A stretch of DNA of 64,000 bases from Neoechinorhynchus agilis (Eukaryota > Animalia > Acanthocephala). Of the stretch, positions 1,851-32,303 are shown one piece after another. Location: NCBI GenBank assembly GCA_051530055.1, contig CM121341.1, forward strand, positions 17,648,784 to 17,712,783, in the 5' to 3' direction. The position numbers and the translations under genes are program-made. The notes under the pieces are model-generated. The model ran no database searches. It was not told the origin of the DNA and saw only the letters and a program-made list of their open reading frames with translations. Positions within the stretch are counted from its first letter, which is position 1, and every line of letters begins with the position of its first letter.

Positions 1851-1861
1851 TCCTTCTTGAG

Positions 1862-2000: not shown

Positions 2001-2518
2001 TTTTCTCAAGCTTTTTGGTTAATATAAAAGACGAGATTACTATGCAAAAATCTTTGTGTCTACAACAAACTTTAACTGATAGGTGCTCAGAAATTGACTG
2101 TAGCATCCAAATCTAAAAGTCTTTATTGCATTGATTTTCCTAACCGTAAAAGTAAAGAAATATGCTAATGTTTGGTTCAAATTCCTTGATCTAAGTTCAT
2201 AGAATAACAATAGAGTTTCAAACAACTCATTGCCAGACGCTGACACCGATTTTCCGTTTCGAGTCATGCATCAACAATGCCCGATATGAGACTCTTCGCT
2301 TATAAAATGATTATTTTATATGATATTTATAGCACTTACGAGGAATTCCAAAGCGTCTAAGCAAAATTTTATCTCATCATCAAATGAAAACTAAACACAT
2401 GGTTGAGCCCTCTAAATTTCTATTAATTTTAGAACTTTAGTCACTTTATATTCGCCCGCGACCTAACTTAAATGTTCGATTCCTCGTTTACCTCACTAAG
2501 TTCGATATGATGGCGCAC

Positions 2519-3794
2519 TCAATCCTCTTGCTCTTCTCCATGATTGTTCAATTCAGGTACAACGCAAAGCACTATGATTCGCATTGTGACGGGAATGATA
2601 ATAAATCCAAAAAATACCATAATTATCAGTGCATAAGCTCCCTTAAGCCCGAGATCGACACCACCTACTGCATTCATTGAACTCACAATTCGTTGTGAAC
2701 CACAATCGTTACAATCATCCATCCGATGATCGATCACATTAGAAAAAGTGTTTTTTTCTAAACCATTGTAGCAATAAATTTGGACATTGTCGATCTTAAA
2801 CAGGATATTATTGCTTTTGTTGTGCCGATCAATGATATTATCAATCGATCAGTCACATTTGAGGTTAAAACAGACAAAATTTCAAAAAGAATTGTTCTAA
2901 ATCAAATACCAACTTCGCTTCCCTAGATTTAATCTTAATAATTTTCAAAGTGAAAACTTAAGCCGAGTCTAATGATCGTCAATACTTCCATAAAAAGCAA
3001 TATTAAGATGCGAAAAATAAGGAATCACAAAGAAAAAATGGTGTTTTGACTGATTGATTTCATCTTACTCACTAAATTTCTAGCTTTGCAACCAAAGCGA
3101 ACGTTTTCAATAAACGTCGTTCGACAACCGACGGATTTATCGACTAAGACTGCCATTTTGAAGGCTCCATTCAATAGATTTTCAAACATATTCATAAGAA
3201 TTTGCGGATATTTTGAATCGGCAAAACTGTTATTAATGAATTCACACTTTTTCATAAAAGCCGAATGCGAATACTTTAATCTATTCAAAAAAGAAATCCC
3301 ACCAAAAGTTTCGAATGGAATTCGATTAGAAAAAATCCAATTGTTCCATAACATTTTTTAACCAAAATGATCCTTAGTGACCTTTTCGCCGAAAAGACAT
3401 TATAAATCAAAGAAAGATCATTTAGATGGCATCCAATAATCGAAAGTCTTCTGAGTGATGGAAAATCGATTGACGCCTTGAAGTTCAGACGAGTCAATTG
3501 AAACTGTTCAATCTTCAATGTAAATAGTTTCGGAAAACTAAGTTTAATTTTCACCGTTGACATTGTCAGAAAACATTTGAGATCATCAGAGCCTCTTAAA
3601 TGGAGATTTCGAATGTAATAGTTGGTTCTATTGGCAGCCATGAGCAGGTCTAAATAAACATGCGAAACATCCCGACAATTAAACGATAATTGATCTTTGC
3701 CTAATAGGAGCTTTTTACTTTTTCTACCAATCGCGTTAATTTTTACTTCTAATTGATTGTAAAGCAAAATAAATAAGAAATAGCCAACAAGCAT
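2519..3794 (-). CDS. Possible LRR-like single-pass membrane protein (interrupted by introns or frameshifts), left-arm copy
   Basis: Consecutive same-strand ORFs give a signal-peptide-like start (MLVGYFLFILLY), LRR-like segments (FPKLFTLKIEQFQL, FPSLRRLSIIGCHLNDL), a Cys-containing juxtamembrane stretch (IYCYNG...DCNDC), a TM helix (AYALIIMVFFGFIIIPV) and a short tail. The frames do not join without splicing or frameshift. Confidence 0.4.
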
Positions 3795-3975
3795 TCGAAA
3801 TCTAGCTAATCGGAAACCCGTTAAAAAATTAAACCAAGGTTACCATGGCAACAATCAAATCTTTTTTCCGCAAAAATCGGGTTGATATGACGCAATGGAA
3901 AAATTTATCGACGTAACGCTTTTAACCTTCTTTCGCCTTTTCGCCCCTTCGTCTCATTGTAAACGTTCTTCCAAA

Positions 3976-5922
3976 TTTCTCCTCACCCTTTTCTCTCTTT
4001 CGAGAGGTCGCCGGTCCTAATATTACACTTATTCGGTGATACATGCCGTGTCAAATTTAACCACGATCTTGGTTTACACGATCCACCCAACGCTTCTTCA
4101 GTCTCCCTCGTCGTCGCCTTCCCAATATCTCGATCACCTCTATGCTTATATCTCCTCTCGCGCTATTCATAACGTTATTGAACCACTGCAATCTTCTTTG
4201 AACTATCACTTCGGTGCATCGGCTCTCTAGCATCCCTCTAACATCCTCGTTTCTTTCCCTATCCCTGAATGTGAAGCCAGCTGACCATCTCAACATCCTC
4301 ATTTCATTCGACTGAGATCGTCTTTCTTGGTCGTCCGCGTCTCTGCGCCGTACAACATCGCTGGTCTCACTACAGTCTCAAATACTCCGATCTTTTTCGA
4401 TTTAACTCGATCCTTTTATCACATACAGAATACGCTTGACATTTTCTTCCAGTTGTGCCATCCGCTTTGTATTCGAGGAGTTATTTTAGGTTTGAGAGAG
4501 TTGACATACTGACCTTACTACCGAGATATTCAACTGAATCTTTCGATGTTAATAGGGTTCCATCTAATTCTAGATCCTCCGGACCCATGTACACTGTCTT
4601 CGCTCTGGTTACTTTGAGTCTGTTACTTTCCAATGCCTCACGTCACCCTTCCAGTCTTTCCTGAGCCACTTCGTGTTTTTCCGCTGTGACTACTTGGCCA
4701 AAGCGCATTCCCTTCTAGCATCTTTCTTACCCTGCTTAAATTCGCTAGATTTTCGGCTGTATATCCATGGTCCCAACTCTTTTTAGCTTCTCGTTTCCGA
4801 CGTATCGCTCGCTTCACTCTTGGTTTCCACCACCAAGCCTCTTTGCCTGACTTTACCCGTCGTCTGTCCGAGAATATTTCGACCCTCTTCCAATATGAGT
4901 TTGGCCGATCGGTTCAATCATGCATTTGAATCCTCCACTTTCGTTTCCCGCTTACCAACTGGCGAATCACCAAATCTCTTACGCAACCACTTGATTCTGG
5001 GGTTCGTTTTCTGAGTATATCGTCTCCTTGTTCTGACCGTCAAGTCTTCTACTATTATCCGATGCTGTGAAACACAATGTTCGTCGAGAATCGTTTTTAC
5101 GTTCGTCAATTCGTGCTATCGCTAAAGGATGTAATCCATTCTACTAACTTTTCCTCCGCTAGAATAGATGGCGAGGTGCCTATCTTCTTTTCGGTAGATG
5201 GTGTTTGTCAGTCTCAACTCCTTTGCCACCGCAAAGTCCAGAAGCTTTTCTCCTTCCGCATTTCGCAATCCAATACCACCAACCACTCGTTCACAGCCAT
5301 CTCTACTTCCCACATGTCCATTAAGATCTCCTGCGACCACACCGTATCTGATAAAGTTTGAAAGAATTTCTCTTTCTCATCTACTCAACATGCTATTTGC
5401 GGGCATAGGCCGATATTGTGATGATATCCTCACCTCTAAAATCTAATCTCACCGAAATGATCCTATCACTTGTCCTGATTACCTCCAAAACACAATTCAC
5501 TAGCTCTTTCTCCAAGATCACTCCCACACCATTTCTGCCACTTGGCTCGCCTTTGTAGATTGTTTTATAACCATCACATCGTTCTCGGGCTTTCACACCC
5601 TTCCACATGGTCTCTTGCACTCCTAGTATTCCGATTTTTCTTCGCATCATGTCCACTATTTCCTTGCTCCTTTCGATCACCGATCAAGCATTTAGCGTTG
5701 ATATTCTTAGGTTAGTTGTGTAGACTAATTTCTTTAGCCGAGACCGTCCATGCCTCGGTAGCCCTTGATGATGTAACACAAGCTCCGGGCGAAGAACTTG
5801 CGCGTCGCATCTTAGTTAATTTGTTTATATGTTTGATGCCATTGGGTTCAAAATTTGGCATATTTTTACAGCCTTATGCCCTTCCTGACTCCAGCCGGGA
5901 TTGGGACCCTCTTGGGTAAAGT
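3976..5922 (-). mobile_element. RTE-clade (Expander/Rex3-like) LINE, both ends present, RT core deleted; left-arm copy
   Basis: APE motifs (ILGVQETMWKG, VAGDLNGHVG, MDYIL) and C-terminal MRMLRWSAG...RLQWF. Flanked by the 16-bp direct repeat TAAACGTTCTTCCAAA at 3960-3975 and 5923-5938 (TSD). Confidence 0.9.
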
Positions 5923-7749
5923 TAAACGTTCTTCCAAACTATTCACAATAATTGGAAAGTTCAGGTCAAATGCACCTTTCGGAGTTTGTTATACTTTCAA
6001 CTGCGGATTCTATATATTTTCGGATTATGCAAAATTTTTGATGAGGAATCTTTTTAGAATTTATCATTGTTCCTGATTGTTGAATCCAGCAAAATATTTA
6101 GCCCGATTATTCTGTCTTGGTCATCATTCATGCGATGACCTTTGCTAAAGTCAGGCGAGATAGTTTCCGATCAGTGGTTCGCCATAGATCTTACAATTTT
6201 GGACACCCGAACTCGAGATCCTTCCATTTATGGAATAGGCAAGTAATTTTTGGGTCACAGCGATCTCTTCATTTTCGTAGTCGGCGTCTAAACGGGACGT
6301 CTGACCCTACCTCCGAAGAAACATTAAAGTTTTTGATGCTGTTCAATGGATTTTTTTAAGGCAATCCCTTAGGAAGGCACTTCAGAGGTAATTTTATTCG
6401 TGGACGTCAGTGCTGTATGAAAGCGTAAAGATGGCTCTGCGGAGGGTCGTTAATTAAAACAAAGAAGCCGAAATTAATGATTGGGTTGCATCTACAAGCT
6501 GAATTGTTCTCACTGTCGTAATTCAGCGCAATTGGGCCGCGTGCCTAAATTCAGCTGTTTTGGTTAACTTCATGTACACTTCAATTTGTTTTCTTTTTGA
6601 TCCGTCTCAGTTGTTGATGCACGGGAAAGTGTCGAGTTAACGGATGAAAGAGAAATTGTTACATTTCAGAATACAATATTGTTCGTCCACAATATCAGCT
6701 TTACCGATTATTTTTTATTGGTAAACAATTTTTGTGGTACACTGAAATTGGGCCGAAACTCGTACTTGTGACCTTATTCGGTTGCAGCAATTTTATTTGG
6801 TCCACAAAGCACCCGAACCCGCTTTTATTTATTTTTGATTGGAAATATTTAAGCTGGGCATATTGATTGCTTTGTCCCTTTTATCGGCCGCTTTGACGGT
6901 TTTTCGATATCGTAAACAAAGCTACATGTCTGCTATCCTTCAATTAATCGAGTAAAATTTGTCTCAATCCGGAGACAGGTTGAAAAATTTTCGACGTGAA
7001 TTCAATTGATTTTTGTAATACATTAGTTTATGTAAAGTAAAACTGATTGCAACAAATTTGTTAACAGAAAAGCGAAATTGAAAAATTCAATGTTGTAAAA
7101 AAGATTGCCATTTGATGGAAATCGTTAATTCAGAATCGATATGATGATTTGTAACAATCCAATTGCGAACACGATAGTGAGCTCAAATTGCTACTCTGAT
7201 CGATTCACAAAACGAAAAAAGCCCAATCGATTTGCGGTTGTACATTCGTGAGCTCGATCATTTTGATTGTTTGAGCGACTAATACGGCATCTGATGGAAT
7301 CTACTAATTTTTCGGATGTCGAAATGAATTTTTCGTATTTTGGAGGACAAAATAGCCTGCAGATTTATCAATAATTATCATTGGTAAACTATTTTTATGG
7401 CAAAATAAAATTGGACTAGAGTACGTGTTTGTGACCAAAATGGGCATCATTGCCATTCTTCGAGATGAGGCAGATGAAACAACCTTTTATTAAAAGAAGT
7501 TTGTTGTCGCTGAGTGTAAACGTGACCTCTGTCCTATTCGACAAATGAATAAAGTTTCCTGAAATTAAAAACGCATTTGGCTCTAAAAAAATTATTTCCC
7601 AACATAAATTATTTCAGAAAAGAATATTTGCCGAACAGACGATAGAGTATTCCGACGGTTCATCTACACTCCTTTTTGTTGTCATCATTTTTTAACGGTT
7701 GAAATCAAACTATTTAAATCCACAACAACATTTTAACTCCTACAGCATC

Positions 7750-8650
7750 TCAAGAAATTACTTCGAAATTCGTCCCCTCAGTCTGAAGTCCCATGCATCA
7801 TCCACGAACTCATAGACCCATTTACCCTCATTATAAATCGCAGCTTTATATATAGCATCTTTCCTTCATGTCTGAAAAATGTTAAAGTGAATCTACTTGT
7901 TGAAAATGGGCATGCGATTTTCGCCGAATCATTCCGTCCGAAAAATGTTTCAAACTCGTCTTCTTCCACTTTGAGCAACGAATTATCGTCCCTACAATTC
8001 GGCTTCCGGCCCAATTTTTCCGCAACGGACGCCCTACCATGCATTTATGACACATTCTTGCGCAACCTCGACAATAATCCCTCTCACGTCATCCGTCTCA
8101 TCCAATTCTATTTATCGAAAGCATTCGACTCTATGAACCACTCACTACTTCGGGCCTGTTCTGATTTCACTATTTCTTCGGGCCTGTTCTGATTTCGGTC
8201 TAAACCCTTGGCTGATCCACTGGCTGATCTCCTATCTTCACAATTGCAAATAATACATTCACTGCCGATCTACCTCCCACTAAAGGCGTCCCTTGAATTG
8301 ATGTCCTGTCACCACTTCTTTTTAACATTTTCTTAAACGACCTTAAACTCTGCTCGTTTCATTCTAAACTTTTCGTATATGCCAACGATCTCAACCTCAT
8401 CTCTCAATCACCAGCCCACCTCTCCTTCTCCTTAACATCTAACGAAATCATCCACATCAAAGATTTCTTCACCAATCACAAACTCTACCTGAACTTCATA
8501 AATGCTTTGAAATGAGCCCCTCAATCCCTCGCAGCCCCATATCCTACTTCGATCTTCCAATTGGCATCGAACGGGTCACCTACCCTTCAGAATTCCGGGT
8601 CTCCAGTTTCAATCAAATATTGAGTGGGATTCTAGCATTAAGCTTTCCCT
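7750..8650 (+). mobile_element. Degraded CR1/L2/Jockey-group RT fragment, left-arm copy (carries a 28-bp tandem duplication)
   Basis: IINRSFIYSIFPSCLKNVKV...LQFGFRPNFSATDAL...YLSKAFDSMNHSLL...PWLIHWLISYL. Confidence 0.75.
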
Positions 8651-9659
8651 CCTCAAACGCTTCCCCCGCTCGCCAAATGCATTTATAAAATTTTCATCCA
8701 ACAATAAAAACGCTTTTCAACGCTATTACCACAATTTTTGGATAAACTCTAACAACTATGGAAGCGATTTGCTCGAGTATTCGGTTTTAGTTTTTTTTAC
8801 GACAAGACAGATTGTAGCAGCGAGCGTTGTAAATGAGAGCAAATCAAAATTTGGTAATTAAATGAGTGTTGTTAGCAACGCGCTTAATTGCTTGGTAGTT
8901 ACCAATTTTTCGGAAAGAAGCACGAAAAGCCCAACTATTTATTAACTAGCGATGGATTGAACCATCGAAAGTACTAATGAGCGATTCTCAGTTGTATTTG
9001 CTCAATTTTCGCTATCTAATTCCTCAGCCAAGTTTTCATGGCACTTTTCGAGAACATTTGTGAACAAGGTCTCATTGAATTTATACCAATAATAAACTTC
9101 TGATTCATGACTGAAATGCTGTTCACCTCGATCGTATTGACCACTTGACGCCGACAAAACGGTTCGGAGTCATCTTCCGCAAACGATTCGACGTAGGCTC
9201 TAATTAGATGTGGTTCGTTAAGAACTTGTCTTGCAGGCAGACATCGTGCTTTAGAATTTTCTTCAAAATCGTAGAAGACCACAAAGATGGACTTATGCTG
9301 TAGTTCCTTTTGTTCCACGTGTTTTAACATTTCTCGGACGAAATTGGATTAACTATCATTTCCACGAATTATCCACTATTCATCGTTAATTGCGATTTCT
9401 CGACGATTACGGCAGCTGACTGATGATAAGGCGATCAAGCAAAGAAAAGCAATCATTTTGTCGTTCGAATGAGAGATTGACGGTTAATTTTTTAACGATG
9501 GATCGGTTCTTTTTATACCTCAGATGTTTTCTGAACACATTCGAAAATAATCGATCATCGTACTTGTTTTTGAAAACAATCATACTTTCAAAATATTCTT
9601 CGATTCAAATCAAAATTTATTTTAGTTGCAGCTTTTACAGGCATTTACGAATATTCATG

Positions 9660-10130
9660 CCACCACTGCAGTATTGGTGTAACGGTCGAAAGGACGAATT
9701 AAGCGTTCCCTCGTTGCACAGTCAGACTTTCGTTTTGTAGGAGGAATGCTCTTTATCTCGGATCGCCGGTGATTCGTCTCAAGCTCTTAGACAATTACTT
9801 GACCAGTTTCTGCGCCGCGGCACCAAACGACTCGAGTGTCTCGACACCAAAGGGGACAAAATAATGATTTCGACTCAGGTACCTGTATTTAATCTTTTTG
9901 CGGTCCTCAGTGGCTTTTTCTGTTCCTCTGATTTAAGCGCGGCGAATTTTATGTTGCTGGCTGCGATCGTGTCCACGAACGTGGCGTCCCAGAGGATGCA
10001 TTTTCCTTCTCGCCACGGGAATACTGTGACGCCGTCCGGTCTACTGCGGCCATAGAGTCGGCAAAGATTGCTCGGCGGGTACATTCGCCTCATTACAACG
10101 GTAAATCTGAAACTGATTGTTTGCAACCAT
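9660..10130 (-). mobile_element. CRE-type non-LTR retrotransposon 3' fragment (restriction-like endonuclease), left-arm copy
   Basis: RPDGVTVFPWREGKCILWDATFVDTIAASN, followed by FVPFGVET and VQRGNA motifs. Confidence 0.8.
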
Positions 10131-10339
10131 TGACGGGTGCCTGCTCGCTGCCTGAATCTTCACACCAAAGGCTAACAACCTTCATCTTAGTGAAGTATTT
10201 TGCACAAAACAAAAGAAAGTGAACGTATATCCAACAAATTTTCTTTAGTTTATTAGATTCAAATATTTACTGATTTTCTTTAACAAATTGAGTAAGCCAA
10301 GTTTCCGATTCTTTAGATGATGAAATTTCAGCTCGACTC

Positions 10340-10740
10340 ACCCAAATCGACTTTTATAAATCTTTTGATCCTGTCGATCACAGTCTTCTCCTTGATACAT
10401 GCTTTAAGTTTGACCTTACCGCCTGGCAAATCAAATGGTTGAATTCCTTTCTAAACAATAGATTACAATTTATCGAAATAGGGAACATCGTCTCGAACAC
10501 CTTAGCAATTAACAAGGGAGTTCCCAAAGGAGCTGTTCCCCCCTTCATTCTTTTCAACATTTTCCTGAATGTTCCTTTTCCATCCTCTTCTTATTCTAAA
10601 TACTTCTTGTATACTGATGATCTGACAATCATTACGCATGACTCCCCTCTCACTCTCAATTACTTCTAACGATATTTCTCATTTTCAACCATTTTGCTCC
10701 TCTAAATGTCTTACCCTTAATTTAAGCAAGTGCTTCGAAA
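10340..10740 (+). mobile_element. LINE RT fragment (CR1/Jockey group), left-arm copy
   Basis: DFYKSFDPVDHSLLL...WLNSFLNNRLQFIEIG...GVPKGAVPPFILFNIFLN...LYTDDL. Confidence 0.75.
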
Positions 10741-10811
10741 TCGTCTCTTAAATCTCAAATTGTATGGTATGCAACGGTACTTTCCTACGTTGCACCGTAG
10801 GTATAAGCCCG

Positions 10812-13200
10812 TCAAATAGAATTAGATTCCGCAAGGGATCTAAAATACACGACAGCAGTCCTGTTATGCGAGCAATTCGCGTCTCTTAAAATCAGGTCAT
10901 CGTATGTACGACAGTTCCCTTTGCCTTTACGATACAATGTCGTTGCCTTCCAGAAAAGGAACTGTTGCACGACCTGTGGGCAAGATGCCTCGGACCGAAT
11001 TATATTGCCCGTGAACTGCAATCGTCTGCGGTGCAAATATTCACTGGGCGGTTGGACACCGGCTCTCTTATACAGTGCTTTGTTGGTCACTTTATCTGAC
11101 CATCTGACCTTGAACGCCGCACGTAAGAGAGATGAATGATTTTGGTCCAACTGCCTCGTCATCGTTGGTGACAGTGTCCAGGTCTCTGCATTGCAGTAGA
11201 GAATGCACTCAATTGGAGCCCTGAACAGCTGCGAACGGAGTTCATCTGGCAAAGACTCACTGTCAAAAAGTGGTTTAAGTTGTCCCATTGCTCTCCAAGC
11301 TATAGCTCTCCGTCGGCTGACATCCGCACTAACCTCAGCAACGACAACTCCCAGATAGACATACCGCTCTATCTGTTTTAATTGCTCAATGCCATTCGGC
11401 CCTTGTCAAGAATTCCGCCTTTTTCGAGTTGATGGTCAGACCAATCATACTCGCCCTCTCGCACAGTCTATTTAGCATGCGTTGAGCTCCTTCGACTGTT
11501 GAGGACATCAATACGATGTCGTCAGCATATGCCATGTGGGAGGCGCGTATCTCAGGATACCTGCGACCTCTTTTCCTCAAAAGAAGAAATCCATCTTCAT
11601 CATTCGGTAGTGCCCATCTGATTACCCAATCAAGCACCAAGATGAAGAGGAAAGGAGCCAATGTGTCGCCCTGCAGAACACCTGAAGTGGTGGAAAAGTA
11701 TTCTGTCAAACCGTCGGCTGTCTTGGCGGCGGACCTTGTGTTTTTTATAATGCCATAACGGATGTGACAATGATGGGCGGCACTCCATACTCCTTTAAGA
11801 TACCGCCAATCATCGTTCGATTTACCGAATCGAAAGCTCGACGGAAATCAACAAATACCAGCGTCACATCCGTTTGATGAATTCGTGCCTCCTCGAGGAT
11901 CCTCCTCAAAGCCAATATGTGCTCTGTGGTGCCTCGACCTTCCCTGAAGCCGTTCTGTTCAATTCTTAGAAACGGTTCGAGGATTGGCTGAATTCGGCGT
12001 CTCAAAATGCTGCTGTTTCCTCTTCTCCTCATTAGCAAGGGAGCCAAAGAACGGACGTGGAGGATGCTGAGGCGTACGGAACAACGAGTCACTCATGCTG
12101 TTCGGTTGGCAGCTCATCAACTGTGAATGTGTCAGCGTTTTTGACCCGACATTTTTCCCTACGCCTCAACAATATATGGTCAAGCTGAGCTAAGCGTCTC
12201 TTGGGATTTTTTCCCATGGCATGTTTGGACGGATTCTTTTGACCCATAAACGTCGCCAAACGCCACGGACGCTTCCGGAATAGTGTTAGCAGACACGAGA
12301 TCATGCCGCTCCAGCGCCTCAACCAAGTACCGGCTGTTCCGATTCTCGCCTTTCAACACATATAGCAATCTTTCCGAATGTGGTAAAATCGCGTTGAAGT
12401 CACCGGCTATTAAGAGGGTGTCTCTGTTCGGTACATCATCTAATGCTTCGCCTAGATTTCCACAAAATCCTTCAACCGCCTCTTCGTCCGACGAGGAGGT
12501 CGGTGAATATACGCCAAAAGCATAGAGATTTCTCGGCCGAAGCTTTATGCTGACACGAAGGATTCGGTCAGTTATAAAACTGCATAGTGCTGAGTTTCGG
12601 AGGCGGGGTGATAAACAAACGCTTACACCTCCATTTCCTCGACTGTCCGCAGATAGGTAAGATAATGGGCAGCCTCCTCCTAAATCCTCGTGATTTACGT
12701 CTGTGTCTGACTGGCCTCTTATGCGCAATTCTTGTAAAAACACAAGATCCATTCTGGCGTCCCTTGCCAATTTGGCCAGGGTTCCCTTACGCCATTGCGC
12801 TCGCAGACTCCTACAATTCAAGGATCTGATTCGTAGTCCTCTTCTATCTGAAATAGCTGGGCCAAAGGGCTCACAGCTGTCAGTGCCACCTGAACAGTCC
12901 GTACCCACCACGGTGATGAGCTTCGACTGACGCTTTTGTTGCCTCCGGCGACAGTTTCGCTCATTTCGACGCTCAAGTCGTCGGCGAGAGCTACGACGCC
13001 CTCGCTTTTTCCCGTTGCACTGGTGGATTTTGTTGCTCCCGTTCGCTGCCGCATCACCAAGTGGAGCGGCACACCGACCCCGCGTTGACAAGCTACTATC
13101 ACTAGCTGCCTGGCCGCCGGAGTTGCTTCTTTTAAGTGACCGACAAGAATCAGTAACATCAAGTCCGATCATCGTGAAAGAAAGTGAGGGACTGAAAGAA
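10812..13200 (-). mobile_element. RTE/RTEX-like LINE with APE and RT, frameshifted; left-arm copy
   Basis: APE motifs (LRIRSLNCRSLR, VFLQELR, IAGDFNA) and RT motifs (EQNGFREGRGTTEHILALRRILE, FVDFRRAFDSV, GVLQGDTLAPFLF, YADDIVL), spread over several frames. Confidence 0.88.
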
Positions 13201-14555
13201 AGTTAGGGACTGATTGATTTGACGATATTATGAATACCAATGTGGAATACTGTAGGTTACGAAAATTGAGGATCGCTTAAATTATTTACCAATTTTTGTA
13301 CATAATTTCTATTTAAAATTGAAATAATGTGAGAAATATTGCAACTACGGCCAAAAAAATTTCGCATTCAAAACAATTCAAATTTTCTTATTTGAACGAG
13401 ATCATAAAATTTACACGAGCGTTTTGTGCTGTAACTCTAGCCGGTAAAATAATTCGAGATAATTTGTAGGAAGTCGACTGTAGTCTCACATTTCACTTAA
13501 AGAGGTTCAGTGTGTCCATTTGCAGCTAGTTTTAGAACCTAGCAAATGACCTTCGAAAAGGCTGCCGAAAGCTTACAGTTTACGAGTGTCATTAGATACC
13601 TGGGGTGCATAATTCGGTGGCCCATATTTTTCCTGATCCAAATAAAACGTGTTATTATAACCCATAAACTGTCATTATCCCCAAATGGGAACTTTGTATT
13701 TTAAATAACCTAGCAATTACAACTGTGACCAAGACATTAAAACAGAAGCTTCGCAAGTTCCAATTGTATTTAGTGAAAGTAGAAATAAAGTGATCGCGTG
13801 AATGGATTGCCGTTTGCACGCAATCTCGTTTCTGCCCAGAGGTCCTCGTCTTCCGCCGTAGTGAGAAAAAGTAAATTTCGACAGCATAAAAGACGTTGTA
13901 GGTCGTGGCATTGCTATTCATTATACAACAGTATAGTCAATGTTTTTGCACTAATTTAACTGGAGTGACACTTGTTGACCCCTCGATTTGCCCACTATTA
14001 TTTGGGACTCGTTGTTTCCATAGTGAATTTCAAGAAGTTCTGGGAAATCGGGTGCAAGGTAACAAATTGGAGAATCGGACTAAAACTGCTTATATCGAAT
14101 AAAATGATTGTGATCAGACTCCAAATTCGCGTTTCCCAAGTATTGCTACGGACACAAATAAAGTAAAAAGTATAAAATACAATTTTGGTTGTGAATGGGC
14201 TCAATTGAATATAACCGGTATCGTTAAAAACTAAAGCGCGGGCTTTAAAACAATTGGCACAAGATGCAGTATCGTTGATAAAATCTTATTTTCATCTCAC
14301 TGTGGGTCCTAGAAGAGTTCATAATTATTACTAAATCAATTTCCTCGATTTTAAACCTCTGGATAAGTTTAGAACGAAGTGAGCTTGAGGAAGTGAACGA
14401 CTTACCCAAAATCTATGAGCGATATTTGATAAACTAATTTTGGTAGCCAACGTGGTGCACTAAAACCCTTCGGGACTTTCTATGGCATCTCTTTTAAAGT
14501 GACCAACGTTTTACCACACATTTTATCATTTGAATTCACTGCGTTCAAATCACAC

Positions 14556-23449: not shown

Positions 23450-23520
23450 CGGGCTTATACCTACGGTGCAACGTAGGAAAGTACCGTTGCATACCATACA
23501 ATTTGAGATTTAAGAGACGA

Positions 23521-23921
23521 TTTCGAAGCACTTGCTTAAATTAAGGGTAAGACATTTAGAGGAGCAAAATGGTTGAAAATGAGAAATATCGTTAGAAGTA
23601 ATTGAGAGTGAGAGGGGAGTCATGCGTAATGATTGTCAGATCATCAGTATACAAGAAGTATTTAGAATAAGAAGAGGATGGAAAAGGAACATTCAGGAAA
23701 ATGTTGAAAAGAATGAAGGGGGGAACAGCTCCTTTGGGAACTCCCTTGTTAATTGCTAAGGTGTTCGAGACGATGTTCCCTATTTCGATAAATTGTAATC
23801 TATTGTTTAGAAAGGAATTCAACCATTTGATTTGCCAGGCGGTAAGGTCAAACTTAAAGCATGTATCAAGGAGAAGACTGTGATCGACAGGATCAAAAGA
23901 TTTATAAAAGTCGATTTGGGT
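23521..23921 (-). mobile_element. LINE RT fragment, right-arm copy
   Basis: Mirror of 10340-10740. Confidence 0.75.
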
Positions 23922-24130
23922 GAGTCGAGCTGAAATTTCATCATCTAAAGAATCGGAAACTTGGCTTACTCAATTTGTTAAAGAAAATCAGTAAATATTT
24001 GAATCTAATAAACTAAAGAAAATTTGTTGGATATACGTTCACTTTCTTTTGTTTTGTGCAAAATACTTCACTAAGATGAAGGTTGTTAGCCTTTGGTGTG
24101 AAGATTCAGGCAGCGAGCAGGCACCCGTCA

Positions 24131-24601
24131 ATGGTTGCAAACAATCAGTTTCAGATTTACCGTTGTAATGAGGCGAATGTACCCGCCGAGCAATCTTTGC
24201 CGACTCTATGGCCGCAGTAGACCGGACGGCGTCACAGTATTCCCGTGGCGAGAAGGAAAATGCATCCTCTGGGACGCCACGTTCGTGGACACGATCGCAG
24301 CCAGCAACATAAAATTCGCCGCGCTTAAATCAGAGGAACAGAAAAAGCCACTGAGGACCGCAAAAAGATTAAATACAGGTACCTGAGTCGAAATCATTAT
24401 TTTGTCCCCTTTGGTGTCGAGACACTCGAGTCGTTTGGTGCCGCGGCGCAGAAACTGGTCAAGTAATTGTCTAAGAGCTTGAGACGAATCACCGGCGATC
24501 CGAGATAAAGAGCATTCCTCCTACAAAACGAAAGTCTGACTGTGCAACGAGGGAACGCTTAATTCGTCCTTTCGACCGTTACACCAATACTGCAGTGGTG
24601 G
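24131..24601 (+). mobile_element. CRE-type 3' fragment, right-arm copy
   Basis: Mirror of 9660-10130. Confidence 0.8.
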
Positions 24602-25610
24602 CATGAATATTCGTAAATGCCTGTAAAAGCTGCAACTAAAATAAATTTTGATTTGAATCGAAGAATATTTTGAAAGTATGATTGTTTTCAAAAACAAGTA
24701 CGATGATCGATTATTTTCGAATGTGTTCAGAAAACATCTGAGGTATAAAAAGAACCGATCCATCGTTAAAAAATTAACCGTCAATCTCTCATTCGAACGA
24801 CAAAATGATTGCTTTTCTTTGCTTGATCGCCTTATCATCAGTCAGCTGCCGTAATCGTCGAGAAATCGCAATTAACGATGAATAGTGGATAATTCGTGGA
24901 AATGATAGTTAATCCAATTTCGTCCGAGAAATGTTAAAACACGTGGAACAAAAGGAACTACAGCATAAGTCCATCTTTGTGGTCTTCTACGATTTTGAAG
25001 AAAATTCTAAAGCACGATGTCTGCCTGCAAGACAAGTTCTTAACGAACCACATCTAATTAGAGCCTACGTCGAATCGTTTGCGGAAGATGACTCCGAACC
25101 GTTTTGTCGGCGTCAAGTGGTCAATACGATCGAGGTGAACAGCATTTCAGTCATGAATCAGAAGTTTATTATTGGTATAAATTCAATGAGACCTTGTTCA
25201 CAAATGTTCTCGAAAAGTGCCATGAAAACTTGGCTGAGGAATTAGATAGCGAAAATTGAGCAAATACAACTGAGAATCGCTCATTAGTACTTTCGATGGT
25301 TCAATCCATCGCTAGTTAATAAATAGTTGGGCTTTTCGTGCTTCTTTCCGAAAAATTGGTAACTACCAAGCAATTAAGCGCGTTGCTAACAACACTCATT
25401 TAATTACCAAATTTTGATTTGCTCTCATTTACAACGCTCGCTGCTACAATCTGTCTTGTCGTAAAAAAAACTAAAACCGAATACTCGAGCAAATCGCTTC
25501 CATAGTTGTTAGAGTTTATCCAAAAATTGTGGTAATAGCGTTGAAAAGCGTTTTTATTGTTGGATGAAAATTTTATAAATGCATTTGGCGAGCGGGGGAA
25601 GCGTTTGAGG

Positions 25611-26483
25611 AGGGAAAGCTTAATGCTAGAATCCCACTCAATATTTGATTGAAACTGGAGACCCGGAATTCTGAAGGGTAGGTGACCCGTTCGATGCCAA
25701 TTGGAAGATCGAAGTAGGATATGGGGCTGCGAGGGATTGAGGGGCTCATTTCAAAGCATTTATGAAGTTCAGGTAGAGTTTGTGATTGGTGAAGAAATCT
25801 TTGATGTGGATGATTTCGTTAGATGTTAAGGAGAAGGAGAGGTGGGCTGGTGATTGAGAGATGAGGTTGAGATCGTTGGCATATACGAAAAGTTTAGAAT
25901 GAAACGAGCAGAGTTTAAGGTCGTTTAAGAAAATGTTAAAAAGAAGTGGTGACAGGACATCAATTCAAGGGACGCCTTTAGTGGGAGGTAGATCGGCAGT
26001 GAATGTATTATTTGCAATTGTGAAGATAGGAGATCAGCCAGTGGATCAGCCAAGGGTTTAGACCGAAATCAGAACAGGCCCGAAGTAGTGAGTGGTTCAT
26101 AGAGTCGAATGCTTTCGATAAATAGAATTGGATGAGACGGATGACGTGAGAGGGATTATTGTCGAGGTTGCGCAAGAATGTGTCATAAATGCATGGTAGG
26201 GCGTCCGTTGCGGAAAAATTGGGCCGGAAGCCGAATTGTAGGGACGATAATTCGTTGCTCAAAGTGGAAGAAGACGAGTTTGAAACATTTTTCGGACGGA
26301 ATGATTCGGCGAAAATCGCATGCCCATTTTCAACAAGTAGATTCACTTTAACATTTTTCAGACATGAAGGAAAGATGCTATATATAAAGCTGCGATTTAT
26401 AATGAGGGTAAATGGGTCTATGAGTTCGTGGATGATGCATGGGACTTCAGACTGAGGGGACGAATTTCGAAGTAATTTCTTGA
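25611..26483 (-). mobile_element. Degraded CR1/L2/Jockey-group RT fragment, right-arm copy
   Basis: Mirror of 7750-8650. It lacks the 28-bp duplication, so the frame runs through SLLRACSDFGLNPWLIHWLISYL. Confidence 0.75.
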
Positions 26484-28303
26484 GATGCTGTAGGAGTTAA
26501 AATGTTGTTGTGGATTTAAATGATTTCAACCGTTAAAAAATGATGACAACAAAAAGGAGTGTAGATGAACCGTCGGAATACTCTATCGTCTGTTCGGCAA
26601 ATATTCTTTTCTGAAATAATTTATGTTGGGAAATAATTTTTTAGAGCCAAATGCGTTTTTAATTTCAGGAAACTTTATTCATTTGTCGAATAGGACAGAG
26701 GTCACGTTTACACTCAGCGACAACAAACTTCTTTTAATAAAAGGTTGTTTCATCTGCCTCATCTCGAAGATTGGCAATGATGCCCATTTTGGTCACAAAC
26801 ACGTACTCTAGTCCAATTTTATTTGGCCATAAAAATGGTTTACCAATGATAATTATTGATAAATCTGCAGGCTATTTTGTCCTCCAAAATACGAAAAATT
26901 CATTTCGACATCCGAAAAATTAGTAGATTCTATCAGATGCCGTATTAGTCGCTCAAACAATCAAAATGATCGAGCTCACGAATGTACAACCGCAAATCGA
27001 TTGGGCTTTTTTCGTTTTGTGAATCGATCAGAGTAGCAATTTGAGCTCACTATCGTGTTCGCAATTGGATTGTTACAAATCATCATATCGATTCTGAATT
27101 AACGATTTCCATCAAATGGCAATCTTTTTTACAACATTGGATTTTTCAATTTCGCTTTTCTGTTAACAAATTTGTTGCAATCAGTTTTACTTTACATAAA
27201 CTAATGTATTACAAAAATCAATTGAATTCACGTCGAAAATTTTTCAACCTGTCTCCGGATTGAGACAAATTTTACTCGATTAATTGAAGGATAGCAGACA
27301 TGTAGCTTTGTTTACGATATCGAAAAACCGTCAAAGCGGCCGATAAAAGGGACAAAGCAATCAATATGCCCAGCTTAAATATTTCCAATCAAAAATAAAT
27401 AAAAGCGGGTTCGGGTGCTTTGTGGACCAAATAAAATTGCTGCAACCGAATAAGGTCACAAGTACGAGTTTCGGCCCAATTTCAGTGTACCACAAAAATT
27501 GTTTACCAATAAAAAATAATCGGTAAAGCTGATATTGTGGACGAACAATATTGTATTCTGAAATGTAACAATTTCTCTTTCATCCGTTAACTCGACACTT
27601 TCCCGTGCATCAACAACTGAGACGGATCAAAAAGAAAACAAATTGAAGTGTACATGAAGTTAACCAAAACAGCTGAATTTAGGCACGCGGCCCAATTGCG
27701 CTGAATTACGACAGTGAGAACAATTCAGCTTGTAGATGCAACCCAATCATTAATTTCGGCTTCTTTGTTTTAATTAACGACCCTCCGCAGAGCCATCTTT
27801 ACGCTTTCATACAGCACTGACGTCCACGAATAAAATTACCTCTGAAGTGCCTTCCTAAGGGATTGCCTTAAAAAAATCCATTGAACAGCATCAAAAACTT
27901 TAATGTTTCTTCGGAGGTAGGGTCAGACGTCCCGTTTAGACGCCGACTACGAAAATGAAGAGATCGCTGTGACCCAAAAATTACTTGCCTATTCCATAAA
28001 TGGAAGGATCTCGAGTTCGGGTGTCCAAAATTGTAAGATCTATGGCGAACCACTGATCGGAAACTATCTCGCCTGACTTTAGCAAAGGTCATCGCATGAA
28101 TGATGACCAAGACAGAATAATCGGGCTAAATATTTTGCTGGATTCAACAATCAGGAACAATGATAAATTCTAAAAAGATTCCTCATCAAAAATTTTGCAT
28201 AATCCGAAAATATATAGAATCCGCAGTTGAAAGTATAACAAACTCCGAAAGGTGCATTTGACCTGAACTTTCCAATTATTGTGAATAGTTTGGAAGAACG
28301 TTT

Positions 28304-28350
28304 AACTTTACCCAAGAGGGTCCCAATCCCGGCTGGAGTCAGGAAGGGCA
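28304..28350 (+). ncRNA. Degenerate twister-ribozyme-like sequence at the RTE 5' end (mirror at 5877-5923, minus strand)
   Basis: AACTTTACC-CAAGAG-GGTCCCAATCCC-GG resembles the RTE-associated twister core as I recall it (AACACTGCC-AATGCC-GGTCCCAAGCCC-GG). The 3' half appears shortened. Confidence 0.5.
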
Positions 28351-30251
28351 TAAGGCTGTAAAAATATGCCAAATTTTGAACCCAATGGCATCAAACATAT
28401 AAACAAATTAACTAAGATGCGACGCGCAAGTTCTTCGCCCGGAGCTTGTGTTACATCATCAAGGGCTACCGAGGCATGGACGGTCTCGGCTAAAGAAATT
28501 AGTCTACACAACTAACCTAAGAATATCAACGCTAAATGCTTGATCGGTGATCGAAAGGAGCAAGGAAATAGTGGACATGATGCGAAGAAAAATCGGAATA
28601 CTAGGAGTGCAAGAGACCATGTGGAAGGGTGTGAAAGCCCGAGAACGATGTGATGGTTATAAAACAATCTACAAAGGCGAGCCAAGTGGCAGAAATGGTG
28701 TGGGAGTGATCTTGGAGAAAGAGCTAGTGAATTGTGTTTTGGAGGTAATCAGGACAAGTGATAGGATCATTTCGGTGAGATTAGATTTTAGAGGTGAGGA
28801 TATCATCACAATATCGGCCTATGCCCGCAAATAGCATGTTGAGTAGATGAGAAAGAGAAATTCTTTCAAACTTTATCAGATACGGTGTGGTCGCAGGAGA
28901 TCTTAATGGACATGTGGGAAGTAGAGATGGCTGTGAACGAGTGGTTGGTGGTATTGGATTGCGAAATGCGGAAGGAGAAAAGCTTCTGGACTTTGCGGTG
29001 GCAAAGGAGTTGAGACTGACAAACACCATCTACCGAAAAGAAGATAGGCACCTCGCCATCTATTCTAGCGGAGGAAAAGTTAGTAGAATGGATTACATCC
29101 TTTAGCGATAGCACGAATTGACGAACGTAAAAACGATTCTCGACGAACATTGTGTTTCACAGCATCGGATAATAGTAGAAGACTTGACGGTCAGAACAAG
29201 GAGACGATATACTCAGAAAACGAACCCCAGAATCAAGTGGTTGCGTAAGAGATTTGGTGATTCGCCAGTTGGTAAGCGGGAAACGAAAGTGGAGGATTCA
29301 AATGCATGATTGAACCGATCGGCCAAACTCATATTGGAAGAGGGTCGAAATATTCTCGGACAGACGACGGGTAAAGTCAGGCAAAGAGGCTTGGTGGTGG
29401 AAACCAAGAGTGAAGCGAGCGATACGTCGGAAACGAGAAGCTAAAAAGAGTTGGGACCATGGATATACAGCCGAAAATCTAGCGAATTTAAGCAGGGTAA
29501 GAAAGATGCTAGAAGGGAATGCGCTTTGGCCAAGTAGTCACAGCGGAAAAACACGAAGTGGCTCAGGAAAGACTGGAAGGGTGACGTGAGGCATTGGAAA
29601 GTAACAGACTCAAAGTAACCAGAGCGAAGACAGTGTACATGGGTCCGGAGGATCTAGAATTAGATGGAACCCTATTAACATCGAAAGATTCAGTTGAATA
29701 TCTCGGTAGTAAGGTCAGTATGTCAACTCTCTCAAACCTAAAATAACTCCTCGAATACAAAGCGGATGGCACAACTGGAAGAAAATGTCAAGCGTATTCT
29801 GTATGTGATAAAAGGATCGAGTTAAATCGAAAAAGATCGGAGTATTTGAGACTGTAGTGAGACCAGCGATGTTGTACGGCGCAGAGACGCGGACGACCAA
29901 GAAAGACGATCTCAGTCGAATGAAATGAGGATGTTGAGATGGTCAGCTGGCTTCACATTCAGGGATAGGGAAAGAAACGAGGATGTTAGAGGGATGCTAG
30001 AGAGCCGATGCACCGAAGTGATAGTTCAAAGAAGATTGCAGTGGTTCAATAACGTTATGAATAGCGCGAGAGGAGATATAAGCATAGAGGTGATCGAGAT
30101 ATTGGGAAGGCGACGACGAGGGAGACTGAAGAAGCGTTGGGTGGATCGTGTAAACCAAGATCGTGGTTAAATTTGACACGGCATGTATCACCGAATAAGT
30201 GTAATATTAGGACCGGCGACCTCTCGAAAGAGAGAAAAGGGTGAGGAGAAA
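28305..30251 (+). mobile_element. RTE-clade LINE, right-arm copy
   Basis: TSD TTTGGAAGAACGTTTA at 28289-28304 and 30252-30267. Has the 5' motif AGGAAGGGCATAAGGCTGTAAAAA and a 3' hairpin CTCTC-GAAA-GAGAG followed by a purine-rich tail. Confidence 0.9.
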
Positions 30252-30432
30252 TTTGGAAGAACGTTTACAATGAGACGAAGGGGCGAAAAGGCGAAAGAAG
30301 GTTAAAAGCGTTACGTCGATAAATTTTTCCATTGCGTCATATCAACCCGATTTTTGCGGAAAAAAGATTTGATTGTTGCCATGGTAACCTTGGTTTAATT
30401 TTTTAACGGGTTTCCGATTAGCTAGATTTCGA

Positions 30433-31708
30433 ATGCTTGTTGGCTATTTCTTATTTATTTTGCTTTACAATCAATTAGAAGTAAAAATTAACGCGATTGG
30501 TAGAAAAAGTAAAAAGCTCCTATTAGGCAAAGATCAATTATCGTTTAATTGTCGGGATGTTTCGCATGTTTATTTAGACCTGCTCATGGCTGCCAATAGA
30601 ACCAACTATTACATTCGAAATCTCCATTTAAGAGGCTCTGATGATCTCAAATGTTTTCTGACAATGTCAACGGTGAAAATTAAACTTAGTTTTCCGAAAC
30701 TATTTACATTGAAGATTGAACAGTTTCAATTGACTCGTCTGAACTTCAAGGCGTCAATCGATTTTCCATCACTCAGAAGACTTTCGATTATTGGATGCCA
30801 TCTAAATGATCTTTCTTTGATTTATAATGTCTTTTCGGCGAAAAGGTCACTAAGGATCATTTTGGTTAAAAAATGTTATGGAACAATTGGATTTTTTCTA
30901 ATCGAATTCCATTCGAAACTTTTGGTGGGATTTCTTTTTTGAATAGATTAAAGTATTCGCATTCGGCTTTTATGAAAAAGTGTGAATTCATTAATAACAG
31001 TTTTGCCGATTCAAAATATCCGCAAATTCTTATGAATATGTTTGAAAATCTATTGAATGGAGCCTTCAAAATGGCAGTCTTAGTCGATAAATCCGTCGGT
31101 TGTCGAACGACGTTTATTGAAAACGTTCGCTTTGGTTGCAAAGCTAGAAATTTAGTGAGTAAGATGAAATCAATCAGTCAAAACACCATTTTTTCTTTGT
31201 GATTCCTTATTTTTCGCATCTTAATATTGCTTTTTATGGAAGTATTGACGATCATTAGACTCGGCTTAAGTTTTCACTTTGAAAATTATTAAGATTAAAT
31301 CTAGGGAAGCGAAGTTGGTATTTGATTTAGAACAATTCTTTTTGAAATTTTGTCTGTTTTAACCTCAAATGTGACTGATCGATTGATAATATCATTGATC
31401 GGCACAACAAAAGCAATAATATCCTGTTTAAGATCGACAATGTCCAAATTTATTGCTACAATGGTTTAGAAAAAAACACTTTTTCTAATGTGATCGATCA
31501 TCGGATGGATGATTGTAACGATTGTGGTTCACAACGAATTGTGAGTTCAATGAATGCAGTAGGTGGTGTCGATCTCGGGCTTAAGGGAGCTTATGCACTG
31601 ATAATTATGGTATTTTTTGGATTTATTATCATTCCCGTCACAATGCGAATCATAGTGCTTTGCGTTGTACCTGAATTGAACAATCATGGAGAAGAGCAAG
31701 AGGATTGA
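30433..31708 (+). CDS. Possible LRR-like single-pass membrane protein, right-arm copy
   Basis: Mirror of 2519-3794, with identical translations in the ORF track. Confidence 0.4.
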
Positions 31709-32303
31709 GTGCGCCATCATATCGAACTTAGTGAGGTAAACGAGGAATCGAACATTTAAGTTAGGTCGCGGGCGAATATAAAGTGACTAAAGTTCTAAAA
31801 TTAATAGAAATTTAGAGGGCTCAACCATGTGTTTAGTTTTCATTTGATGATGAGATAAAATTTTGCTTAGACGCTTTGGAATTCCTCGTAAGTGCTATAA
31901 ATGTCATATAAAATAATCATTTTATAAGCGAAGAGTCTTATATCGGGCATTATTGATGCATGACTCGAAACAAAAAATCGGTGTCAGCGTCTGGCAATGA
32001 GTTGTTTGAAACTCTATTGTTATTCTATGAACTTAGATCAAGGAATTTGAACCAAGCATTAGCATATTTCTTTACTTTTACGGTTAGGAAAATCAATGCA
32101 ATAAAGACTTTTAGATTTGGATGCTACAGTCAATTTCTGAGCACCTATCAGTTAAAGTTTGTTGTAGACACAAAGATTTTTGCATAGTAATCTCGTCTTT
32201 TATATTAACCAAAAAGCTTGAGAAAATTGCAGCGAAGATAAATCAAACCTCGCCTGGTCTTCATTGTTTCAAACTATCACGTATGTTAGGTCTAATCAAA
32301 AGC

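What the first reader, a model, noticed from the sequence alone, without database searches (positions are those of the whole stretch)
2001..32226. 30-kb gene-bearing palindrome with only a 2-nt spacer
Seen: 15.1-kb arms meet at TTGATATAA-CT-TTATATCAA, and the flanks beyond 2001 and 32226 are unrelated (LINE debris and POLR1A on the left, the ABCC10 3' end on the right). Established: long spacer-less palindromes extrude cruciforms and are normally unstable, and gene-bearing sex-chromosome palindromes have kb-scale spacers. Inference: this is either a recent fold-back duplication or a maintained palindrome that doubles a calcineurin A and orphan-TM gene pair. An assembly fold-back artefact (long-read or amplification chimera) remains a real alternative. 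The bounded left end and the multi-base indels between arms argue against a simple single-molecule artefact.
Basis: partly seen in the sequence, partly recalled or inferred. Interest (0 to 1): 0.8.

Follow-up and report, generated by a model that had tools for sequence, protein, structure and literature searches.

The report
Spacer-less 30-kb palindrome, probably misassembly
The 30-kb mirror-image duplication is really in the deposited thorny-headed-worm genome sequence, but the way that draft was built makes an assembly error more likely than real biology, and only the raw reads can settle it.

Summary
Arms 2001-17129 and 17132-32226 are inverted copies around a 2-nt CT, and the flanks are unrelated. 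The arms differ by 13 substitutions and three indels of 1, 5 and 28 nt.

The window is Neoechinorhynchus agilis (Acanthocephala), GCA_051530055.1, chromosome CM121341.1. That draft came from DNA of about 50 pooled worms. It used Nanopore R9.4 reads plus Illumina, MaSuRCA/Flye, purge_dups, Hi-C scaffolding and TGS-GapCloser.

The arm differences are transition-biased (10:3) and strongly clustered. They look like natural variants, not read errors and not even divergence after a duplication. That fits two haplotypes of one locus. It also fits a young real duplication.

My estimate:
- about 0.6: the spacer-less palindrome is an assembly product (fold-back read or inverted haplotype copy);
- about 0.22: a real, recent fold-back duplication;
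- about 0.12: a real inverted repeat whose spacer was lost;
- about 0.04: an old, maintained palindrome.

No independent assembly or reads were reachable, so this stays unproven. The "gene pair" is weaker than stated. The calcineurin-like gene is a divergent paralogue with a frame problem. The TM ORF is unannotated and has no homologues.

The parts
2001..17129 (.). Left arm of the palindrome (15,129 nt)
17130..17131 (.). Two-base centre 'CT'. One base change on either side would make a perfect zero-spacer palindrome.
   Evidence: The 160 nt around it fold into a perfect hairpin, -97 kcal/mol, z = -27.6.
17132..32226 (.). Right arm (15,095 nt)
1857..2000 (+). Truncated reverse-transcriptase fragment of a repeat family, abutting the left boundary. 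It is 92% identical to 7971-8107 inside the arm.
   Evidence: Nucleotide homology ends at 1993. No RT homology was detected in 2001-3600.
32227..32747 (-). Right flank: 78 nt, then the last coding ORF (second ATP-binding domain) of an ABCC-type transporter
1..521 (-). Left flank: first coding exon of the RNA polymerase I largest subunit (POLR1A/RPA1). It is intact and points away from the palindrome.
14556..15931 (-). Calcineurin A-like gene, left copy (annotated protein of 426 aa, ACOME3_004230)
18330..19705 (+). Calcineurin A-like gene, right copy. It encodes the identical protein; the one nucleotide difference (15338/18923) is synonymous.
16138..16674 (-). 178-aa hydrophobic ORF, left copy (mirror copy at 17587-18123 +). 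Not annotated, no homologue.
10812..13172 (-). Decayed LINE (endonuclease plus reverse transcriptase, broken into at least 4 ORFs). Mirror copy at 21089-23449.
2171..2324 (.). Difference cluster 1: six transitions within 154 nt
7087..8196 (.). Difference cluster 2: five substitutions plus the 1-, 5- and 28-nt indels, in and next to the RT-like repeat fragment

Best explanation
The palindrome is a feature of the deposited assembly, not (as drawn) of the worm's chromosome. The locus is most likely single-copy.

Inferred mechanism, none of it shown directly: at a place where the contig could not be extended, the path turned back on itself. One route is a Nanopore fold-back read, in which template and complement strand of one molecule of about 15 kb are read as a single sequence. 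The other route is a second haplotype copy of the same 15-kb stretch placed in inverted orientation. The resulting end was then joined to the neighbouring contig by Hi-C scaffolding and the gap was closed.

Later consensus steps sorted variants from the 50-worm pool between the two copies. That produced the 13 substitutions and three indels. purge_dups compares contigs with one another, so it would probably not remove a duplication inside one contig (my own knowledge).
For: Shown by tool results or papers:
- The source is N. agilis GCA_051530055.1.
- Its methods: DNA from a pool of about 50 worms; 4.17 Gb of Nanopore R9.4 reads; only 0.088 Gb of HiFi; MaSuRCA hybrid assembly with Flye; purge_dups; instaGRAAL joins marked with 10 N; manual curation; TGS-GapCloser.
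- Contig N50 was only 482 kb before scaffolding. The final assembly keeps about 0.9 N per 100 kb, so most joins were sealed without N.
- Nanopore genomic libraries contain 0.55-0.6% fold-back artefact reads, and 1-4% in another study. [quoted passage not shown] They are sometimes recurrent at one site (PMC12870357). A 2-nt centre fits that.
- TGS-GapCloser ignores gap length, and gap fillers raise misassembly counts (PMC10166144).
They were put down to erroneous scaffolding of phased haplotypes (PMC8494291).
- Haplotype-derived false duplications are the main class of false gene gain, and in the long-read VGP assemblies most lie on the same scaffold (PMC9516828).
- The arm differences are 10 transitions to 3 transversions and are strongly clustered (P about 3e-5). 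The differences form two tight clusters separated by difference-free stretches of 4.8 and 5.0 kb. They are therefore real biological variants, not read errors, and not even accumulation after a duplication.
- A truncated fragment of a repeat family ends at the left boundary.

Inferred or from my own knowledge:
- Repeats are a typical place for a contig to end.
- An arm of 15.1 kb is a plausible length for one molecule from a column DNA preparation.
- Spacer-less palindromes of this size are fragile wherever they have been tested (review PMC7999016; mouse palindromic-transgene data from my own knowledge). The natural hairpin elements in this same window have 47-73-nt arms, 83-93% match and 15-91-nt spacers.
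Against: There are no N bases anywhere in the window, so neither outer junction is visibly a scaffold join.

I could not build a fully clean route by which this pipeline seals a fold-back contig end onto the next contig without reads that span the join.

From my own memory of the software: Flye discards reads that overlap their own reverse complement, and MaSuRCA rebuilds long reads from Illumina k-mers. Both should suppress simple fold-back chimeras.

Both flanking genes are intact, so a real insertion of one inverted arm between them is not excluded.

No read depth, read alignment or independent assembly was available.
Confidence: 0.6

Rival explanations
1. A real, recent fold-back inverted duplication. 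A double-strand break or stalled fork arose next to position 17131. The end snapped back on a few bases of homology (TATAA/TTATA) or switched template. About 15 kb was copied backwards, and the new end was joined to the other broken end. Both gene copies exist, and the variant is common in the sampled population. The arm differences come from population variants that the assembler sorted between the arms.
For: Both outer junctions are seamless, with no N and no broken gene. Only two novel junctions are needed. The truncated repeat at 2000 could be the resected side of the break. The bases after the centre (TT) are the same as the first two bases of the right flank, a 2-nt microhomology if arm and right flank were once adjacent; this is weak. 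The pipeline's own filters against fold-back reads favour a junction seen in several reads (my own knowledge).
Against: To be assembled from a pool of about 50 worms the variant must be common, and so many generations old. Yet the centre is perfect to 2 nt and there are no differences for nearly 1.8 kb on each side. Long spacer-less palindromes are fragile in every system tested (my own knowledge). Earlier palindromes reported in another rotiferan draft genome were all artefacts.
Confidence: 0.22
2. A real inverted duplication with an ordinary spacer, whose middle was lost in assembly. Both arms and both outer junctions are real. Two contigs each ran into the same collapsed repeat and stopped at the same base. 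Scaffolding put them head to head, and the gap closer sealed them with 2 nt.
For: This explains the seamless outer junctions, the exactly mirrored inner ends, and arm differences that resemble paralogue variants homogenised by gene conversion. Scaffolds under 5 kb were discarded, so a short spacer contig could have been dropped.
Against: Reads spanning a short spacer would be plentiful at roughly 90x Nanopore coverage (4.17 Gb on a 46-Mb genome). A gap closer would then have put the spacer back rather than 2 nt. No trace of spacer sequence remains at the centre.
Confidence: 0.12
3. An old palindrome kept alike by arm-to-arm gene conversion, as on sex chromosomes, doubling a calcineurin-like gene and a membrane-protein gene.
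For: Arm identity of 99.7-99.9%, with differences in patches.
Against: The 2-nt spacer contrasts with the kb-scale spacers of known maintained palindromes. The calcineurin-like gene has a frame problem, and its annotated product lacks a conserved core strand. The TM ORF has no support as a gene. About two thirds of each arm is transposon debris or sequence with no recognisable coding content.
Confidence: 0.04

Closest known systems
Nanopore fold-back (template-complement) artefact reads, and the palindromic contigs they seed
   Same: A near-perfect inverted duplicate with almost nothing between the halves. The arm length is within one molecule. The source library is Nanopore R9.4 genomic DNA.
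   Different: The palindrome here lies inside a chromosome-scale scaffold with no N beside it, and the arms carry natural-looking variants. At least one further assembly step is needed: a join plus haplotype-sorted consensus.
Palindromes of the first Adineta vaga draft genome (AV13)
   Same: Another rotiferan (acanthocephalans are rotiferan parasites). [quoted passage not shown]
   Different: Those came from a short-read-era scaffolder. Here the junction is sealed to the base.
Heterotype (haplotype) false duplications in genome assemblies
   Same: Two adjacent copies on one scaffold that differ by allelic-looking variants and create false gene gains.
   Different: Typical cases have a gap between the copies. 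This one is inverted and gap-free. The defining half depth could not be measured.
Fold-back inversions / breakage-fusion-bridge inverted duplications (cancer, yeast, human inv-dup-del)
   Same: A head-to-head junction with little or no spacer and possible microhomology.
   Different: Those are mostly somatic or newly arisen events, usually with a terminal deletion or copy-number steps. Here both flanks continue normally, and the structure would have to be common in a natural population.
Sex-chromosome ampliconic palindromes (human Y P1-P8, X palindromes)
   Same: Arms of 10 kb or more, identity near 99.9%, genes in the arms.
   Different: Those have spacers of kilobases and conserved, expressed gene families. 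Here the spacer is 2 nt and the gene content is doubtful.
Penelope-like element with inverted pseudo-LTR (present in this same window at 52155-55646)
   Same: A genuine inverted repeat produced by element biology.
   Different: It is 1.1 kb with a 1.26-kb spacer and lies inside one element. It is unrelated to the 30-kb structure.

Membership tests
Fold-back-read assembly artefact | Inverted halves separated by at most a few bases | tested here: met
   2-nt centre. [quoted passage not shown]
Fold-back-read assembly artefact | Source data contain such reads (Nanopore or amplified DNA) | tested here: met
   Nanopore R9.4 PromethION reads dominate the long-read data.
Fold-back-read assembly artefact | About half the normal read depth on each arm, and a fold point at the midpoint of the supporting reads | not testable with these tools
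Fold-back-read assembly artefact | Sits at a contig end or next to a gap | tested here: inconclusive
   There is no N in the window. But only about 0.9 N per 100 kb remain, although contig N50 was just 482 kb before scaffolding. No contig map (AGP) was available.
Heterotype (haplotype) false duplication | Copies differ by allelic-type variants | tested here: met
   10 transitions to 3 transversions, indels of 1, 5 and 28 nt, clustered with P about 3e-5. The DNA came from a pool of about 50 worms. This is also compatible with paralogue variants.
Heterotype (haplotype) false duplication | Half depth, single-copy k-mers, discordant pairs, and a gap or depth-gap between the copies | not testable with these tools
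   Criteria are from PMC9516828. There is no N gap between the copies. A depth-gap at the CT centre cannot be checked.
Maintained (gene-conversion) palindrome | Long arms with identity above 99.9% | tested here: met
   13 substitutions in 15.1 kb, or 99.91% excluding indels.
Maintained (gene-conversion) palindrome | A non-palindromic spacer, typically of kilobase scale | tested here: not met
   The spacer is 2 nt.
Maintained (gene-conversion) palindrome | Functional, conserved genes in the arms | tested here: inconclusive
   The calcineurin-like gene has a frame problem and is at most about 50% identical to any relative. The TM ORF has no support.
Fold-back (BFB-type) inverted duplication | Head-to-head junction with short spacer or microhomology | tested here: inconclusive
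   The junction form fits. Microhomology cannot be told apart from the arms themselves.
Fold-back (BFB-type) inverted duplication | A copy-number step supported by reads, present in individual genomes | not testable with these tools
   No reads available.
Foldback / terminal-inverted-repeat transposon | Target-site duplication flanking the element | tested here: not met
   The left flank ends ...GGACGCT and the right flank starts TTGCAGC..., with no direct repeat. The arms are host genes plus LINE debris, not subrepeats.
Programmed extrachromosomal palindrome (ciliate or slime-mould rDNA type) | Free ends or telomeres, and rDNA content | tested here: not met
   The structure is embedded between unique protein-coding genes on both sides of the palindrome.

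The most novel reading that the evidence does not exclude
A 30-kb, essentially spacer-less, gene-bearing palindrome is really present and common in the germ line of a natural acanthocephalan population. That would mean this animal tolerates a structure that is rapidly broken or revised in bacteria, yeast and mammals.
Probability: 0.22. Interest if true: 0.65.

Novelty: not a real feature. Interest (0 to 1): 0.2.

Why it matters
If it is an artefact, there are practical consequences. The public N. agilis reference carries a false 15-kb duplication and a false second calcineurin-like gene. Reads will map ambiguously there. Similar fold-backs may sit elsewhere in this assembly and in other Nanopore-plus-gap-closer drafts, and purge_dups is unlikely to remove such a within-contig duplication (my own knowledge). 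The case is also a close echo of the Adineta vaga palindromes, which shaped ideas about rotifer genome evolution for years before they were retracted.

If it is real, it would be a rare natural test case for how a metazoan germ line tolerates a giant perfect palindrome. It would also be a datable fold-back duplication with both breakpoints known to the base.

Tried and rejected
Independent evidence:
- The exact-protein look-up of the TM ORF found nothing, and its homology search found nothing.
- The calcineurin search found only the deposited N. agilis protein. No second assembly or read-derived contig of this species appeared at 90% identity or more.
- The look-up of that protein returned only this locus.
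- A metagenome scan for the 30-mer ending at the centre found nothing.

Census of other palindromes in this assembly:
- I tried to reach more N. agilis loci through the intact Penelope-like ORF. Transposon proteins are not annotated for this genome, so no loci were found.

Does the left-flank repeat run across 2000/2001, which would make that junction native?
- Nucleotide homology to the in-arm copy stops at 1993. No RT homology was detected in 2001-3600. Pfam does not see the flank copy. The 'LD|AFSQAF' resemblance to the RT motif LDxSKAFD is too short to count.

Rejected or uninformative leads:
- Transposon reading: there is no target-site duplication and the arms are not subrepeats.
- Hi-C bin boundaries: no DpnII or HinfI site lies at any of the three junctions.
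- Soft-masking as a guide to repeats: the files are all upper case.
- Fetching the record's annotation by accession: it is not in those collections.
- Poly(A) signal as a clue to which outer junction is native: only a weak AATATA lies about 20 nt inside the arm. Not decisive.


Full report
**What is in the sequence.** The window holds a 30,226-nt palindrome.
- Left arm: 2001-17129. Right arm: 17132-32226. Two unpaired bases, CT, lie between them.
- One base change at the axis would make it a perfect zero-spacer palindrome.
- The 160 nt around the centre fold into a flawless hairpin (-97 kcal/mol, z = -27.6).
- Homology ends at the very first base outside each arm.

The arms are not identical.
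- There are 13 substitutions and three indels. All three indels are extra bases in the left arm: one A in a homopolymer, AACTA at 7708, and a 28-nt tandem duplication at 8169-8196.
- Ten of the 13 substitutions are transitions.
- The 16 events are far from evenly spread. Six lie within 154 nt (2171-2324). Eight lie within 1.1 kb (7087-8196). Stretches of 4.8 and 5.0 kb have none. In simulation, P is about 3e-5 for the median spacing and 5e-4 for the densest 400 nt.

**What the arms and flanks contain.** Reading the left arm from the centre outwards on the minus strand:
- A 178-aa hydrophobic ORF (16138-16674). It has two strong hydrophobic segments. It has no Pfam hit, no homologue among 5.8 billion proteins, and no gene call in the deposited annotation.
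- A calcineurin A-like gene (14556-15931). Both copies are annotated as the same 426-aa protein.
- A decayed LINE (10812-13172; endonuclease and RT domains in at least four ORFs).
- About 8.8 kb of further retroelement debris and sequence with no recognisable coding content.

The calcineurin-like protein keeps the GDIHG, GDYVDRG and GNHE motifs and an autoinhibitory-like tail. However:
- It is only 44-50% identical to its nearest relatives.
- The annotated 95-nt intron (15129-15223) removes the strand that aligns with 'HNTVRGCSYFYSY' of calcineurin.
- That strand is encoded, but in a different frame from the upstream ORF. So the sequence has either a one-base frame problem near the A6 run at 15225-15230 or a decaying gene.
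- The single arm difference inside the gene is synonymous.

The flanks:
- On the left, the first coding exon of the RNA polymerase I largest subunit starts at 521 on the minus strand and runs out of the window. It is followed by RT fragments at about 1290-2000. The last fragment (1857-1993) is 92% identical to a copy inside the arm at 7971-8107.
- That fragment stops within a few bases of the left boundary. No RT homology was detected in 2001-3600.
- On the right, an ABCC-type transporter on the minus strand ends with its stop codon 78 nt from the boundary.
- No flanking gene is broken.

**Where the sequence comes from.** The calcineurin-like protein matches, at 100%, a protein of Neoechinorhynchus agilis, a thorny-headed worm of mullets. 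It is encoded twice, at about 17.65-17.68 Mb of CM121341.1, a 19.4-Mb chromosome of GCA_051530055.1.

The paper describing this assembly (PMC12690905) reports:
- DNA from a pool of about 50 male and female worms, column-extracted.
- 4.17 Gb of Nanopore R9.4 reads, 17 Gb of Illumina and only 0.088 Gb of HiFi.
- MaSuRCA 4.0.9 hybrid assembly with Flye, then purge_dups.
- Hi-C scaffolding with instaGRAAL (10-N junctions), manual curation, TGS-GapCloser, and removal of scaffolds under 5 kb.
- Contig N50 was 482 kb before scaffolding. The final 46.2-Mb assembly has 0.9 N per 100 kb, roughly 40 ten-N gaps. So most contig joins carry no N.

**Why I rank an assembly artefact first (about 0.6).**

First, the data type is one in which fold-back reads are routine.
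- In Nanopore genomic DNA, 0.55-0.6% of reads are template-plus-complement concatenations. Another study cited there found 1-4%.
- Some recur at the same site, and standard trimming tools miss them (PMC12870357).
- At about 90x coverage of a 46-Mb genome, that means thousands of such reads.
- A 15-kb arm is the size of one molecule from such a preparation (inference).

Second, the assembly came from many individuals, and the differences between the arms are what natural variants look like.
- They are transition-biased.
- They include a tandem-duplication length variant.
- They are bunched into short tracts between long identical stretches.
- This rules out read error. It also rules out the simplest model of even divergence after a duplication.
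- It is what one expects when two copies of one locus are polished with reads from different haplotypes. Such 'heterotype' false duplications are the commonest cause of false gene gains, and in the long-read VGP assemblies most lie on the same scaffold (PMC9516828).

Third, there is a direct precedent in another rotiferan. All the palindromes reported in the first Adineta vaga genome disappeared in the chromosome-level assembly. They were ascribed to erroneous scaffolding of phased haplotypes (PMC8494291).

Fourth, biology argues against the structure as drawn.
- Long palindromes without a spacer are break-prone in every system examined (review PMC7999016; see also the abstracts of PMC8053094 and PMC10164571).
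- A palindromic transgene of about 15 kb in mice was rearranged at the centre within a few generations (my own knowledge: Akgun et al. 1997; Zhou et al. 2001).
- For a structure to be assembled from 50 pooled worms it must be common, and so not brand-new.
- Yet the centre is perfect to 2 nt, and nearly 1.8 kb on each side has no difference.
- The natural hairpin elements in this same window are 47-73 nt per arm, 83-93% matched, with 15-91-nt loops.

Fifth, one outer boundary abuts a truncated member of a repeat family. That is a typical place for a contig to end and be joined to something else (inference).

- The 'bounded left end' carries no weight. In any palindrome the left limit is the mirror of the point where the right arm stops. 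A contig that folds back and then simply ends produces exactly this picture once it is joined to the next contig. Only the centre and one outer junction need be false.
- The multi-base indels do exclude an unpolished copy of a single molecule. They do not exclude a falsely duplicated locus polished from a pool.

**What speaks for a real structure, and why my confidence is only 0.6.**
- There is no N in the window, and both flanking genes are whole.
- I could not write down a clean route by which this pipeline seals a fold-back contig end onto the neighbouring contig without reads that span the join.
- From my own memory of the software: Flye rejects reads that overlap their own reverse complement, and MaSuRCA rebuilds long reads from Illumina k-mers. 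Both should suppress simple fold-back chimeras.
- TGS-GapCloser, however, ignores gap length, and gap fillers add misassemblies (PMC10166144).
- A real event needs only two new junctions. A break beside 17131 is followed by snap-back or template switch, about 15 kb of back-copying, and end joining to the other side. The truncated repeat at 2000 could then be the resected end.
- The TT that follows the central CT is also the start of the right flank. That is a 2-nt microhomology if arm and right flank were once adjacent, but it is weak evidence.

I give the alternatives these weights:
- About 0.22: a recent real fold-back duplication.
- About 0.12: a real inverted repeat whose spacer was lost. 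I mark it down because spanning reads should have restored a short spacer.
- About 0.04: an old gene-conversion palindrome. The 2-nt spacer, the doubtful genes and the mostly transposon or non-coding content all count against it.

**What could not be done.**
- No reads, depth, contig map or second assembly of this species could be reached.
- A census of other palindromes in the assembly was not possible.
- The verdict therefore rests on the anatomy of the differences, the documented assembly route, published artefact rates and precedent. It does not rest on a direct test.
- The decisive tests are cheap with the project's own data. They are: depth and allele balance at the 13 sites in the single-female PCR-free library; junction k-mers; the position of the fold point within centre-crossing long reads; and a comparison with the authors' Flye-only assembly and contig map.

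**Verdict.** This is most probably a false inverted duplication in a draft assembly, of low intrinsic interest, with about a one-in-five chance of being a truly unusual germ-line palindrome.

Noticed in passing
window 52155-55646: A Penelope-like retroelement with an intact 702-aa ORF (53255-55363, reverse transcriptase plus GIY-YIG endonuclease). Its last 1.1 kb is repeated in inverted orientation upstream (52155-53270 versus 54532-55646; 98.6%; 1261-nt spacer). This is the usual inverted pseudo-LTR layout. The nearest proteins are only 25-34% identical and include bdelloid rotifer (Rotaria) copies.
   Followed up: partly
window 15129-15230 (mirror about 19031-19132): The annotated 95-nt intron of the calcineurin-like gene removes a conserved core strand. 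That strand is encoded, but in another frame. So there is either a one-base frame problem near an A6 run or a decaying paralogue. It is identical in both arms.
   Followed up: partly
window 39034-39196, 39280-39500, 40646-40796, 47304-47494: A family of small foldback (MITE-like) hairpin elements, mostly in the span of the ABCC gene. Arms are 47-73 nt, 83-93% matched, with 15-91-nt loops.
   Followed up: partly
window 45881-46279: A nearly perfect (TTA)133 microsatellite of 399 nt, next to a 27-nt GC-rich repeat at 45797-45862.
   Followed up: no
window 1388-1930 and 1857-2000: Two reverse-transcriptase fragments in opposite orientation sit back to back just left of the palindrome. The minus-strand piece covers the N-terminal RT motifs up to Q-x-GF. 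The plus-strand piece starts at QFGFRP.
   Followed up: no
window 50519-51532 and 61543-63633: A single-ORF rhodopsin-family receptor (337 aa) and a 696-aa ORF with cadherin repeats, both on the minus strand.
   Followed up: no
window 24168-24378 (L001 15839-16049): A 70-aa gene is annotated only in the right arm, although the mirrored left-arm sequence is identical. This shows the annotation treats the two copies unevenly.
   Followed up: no
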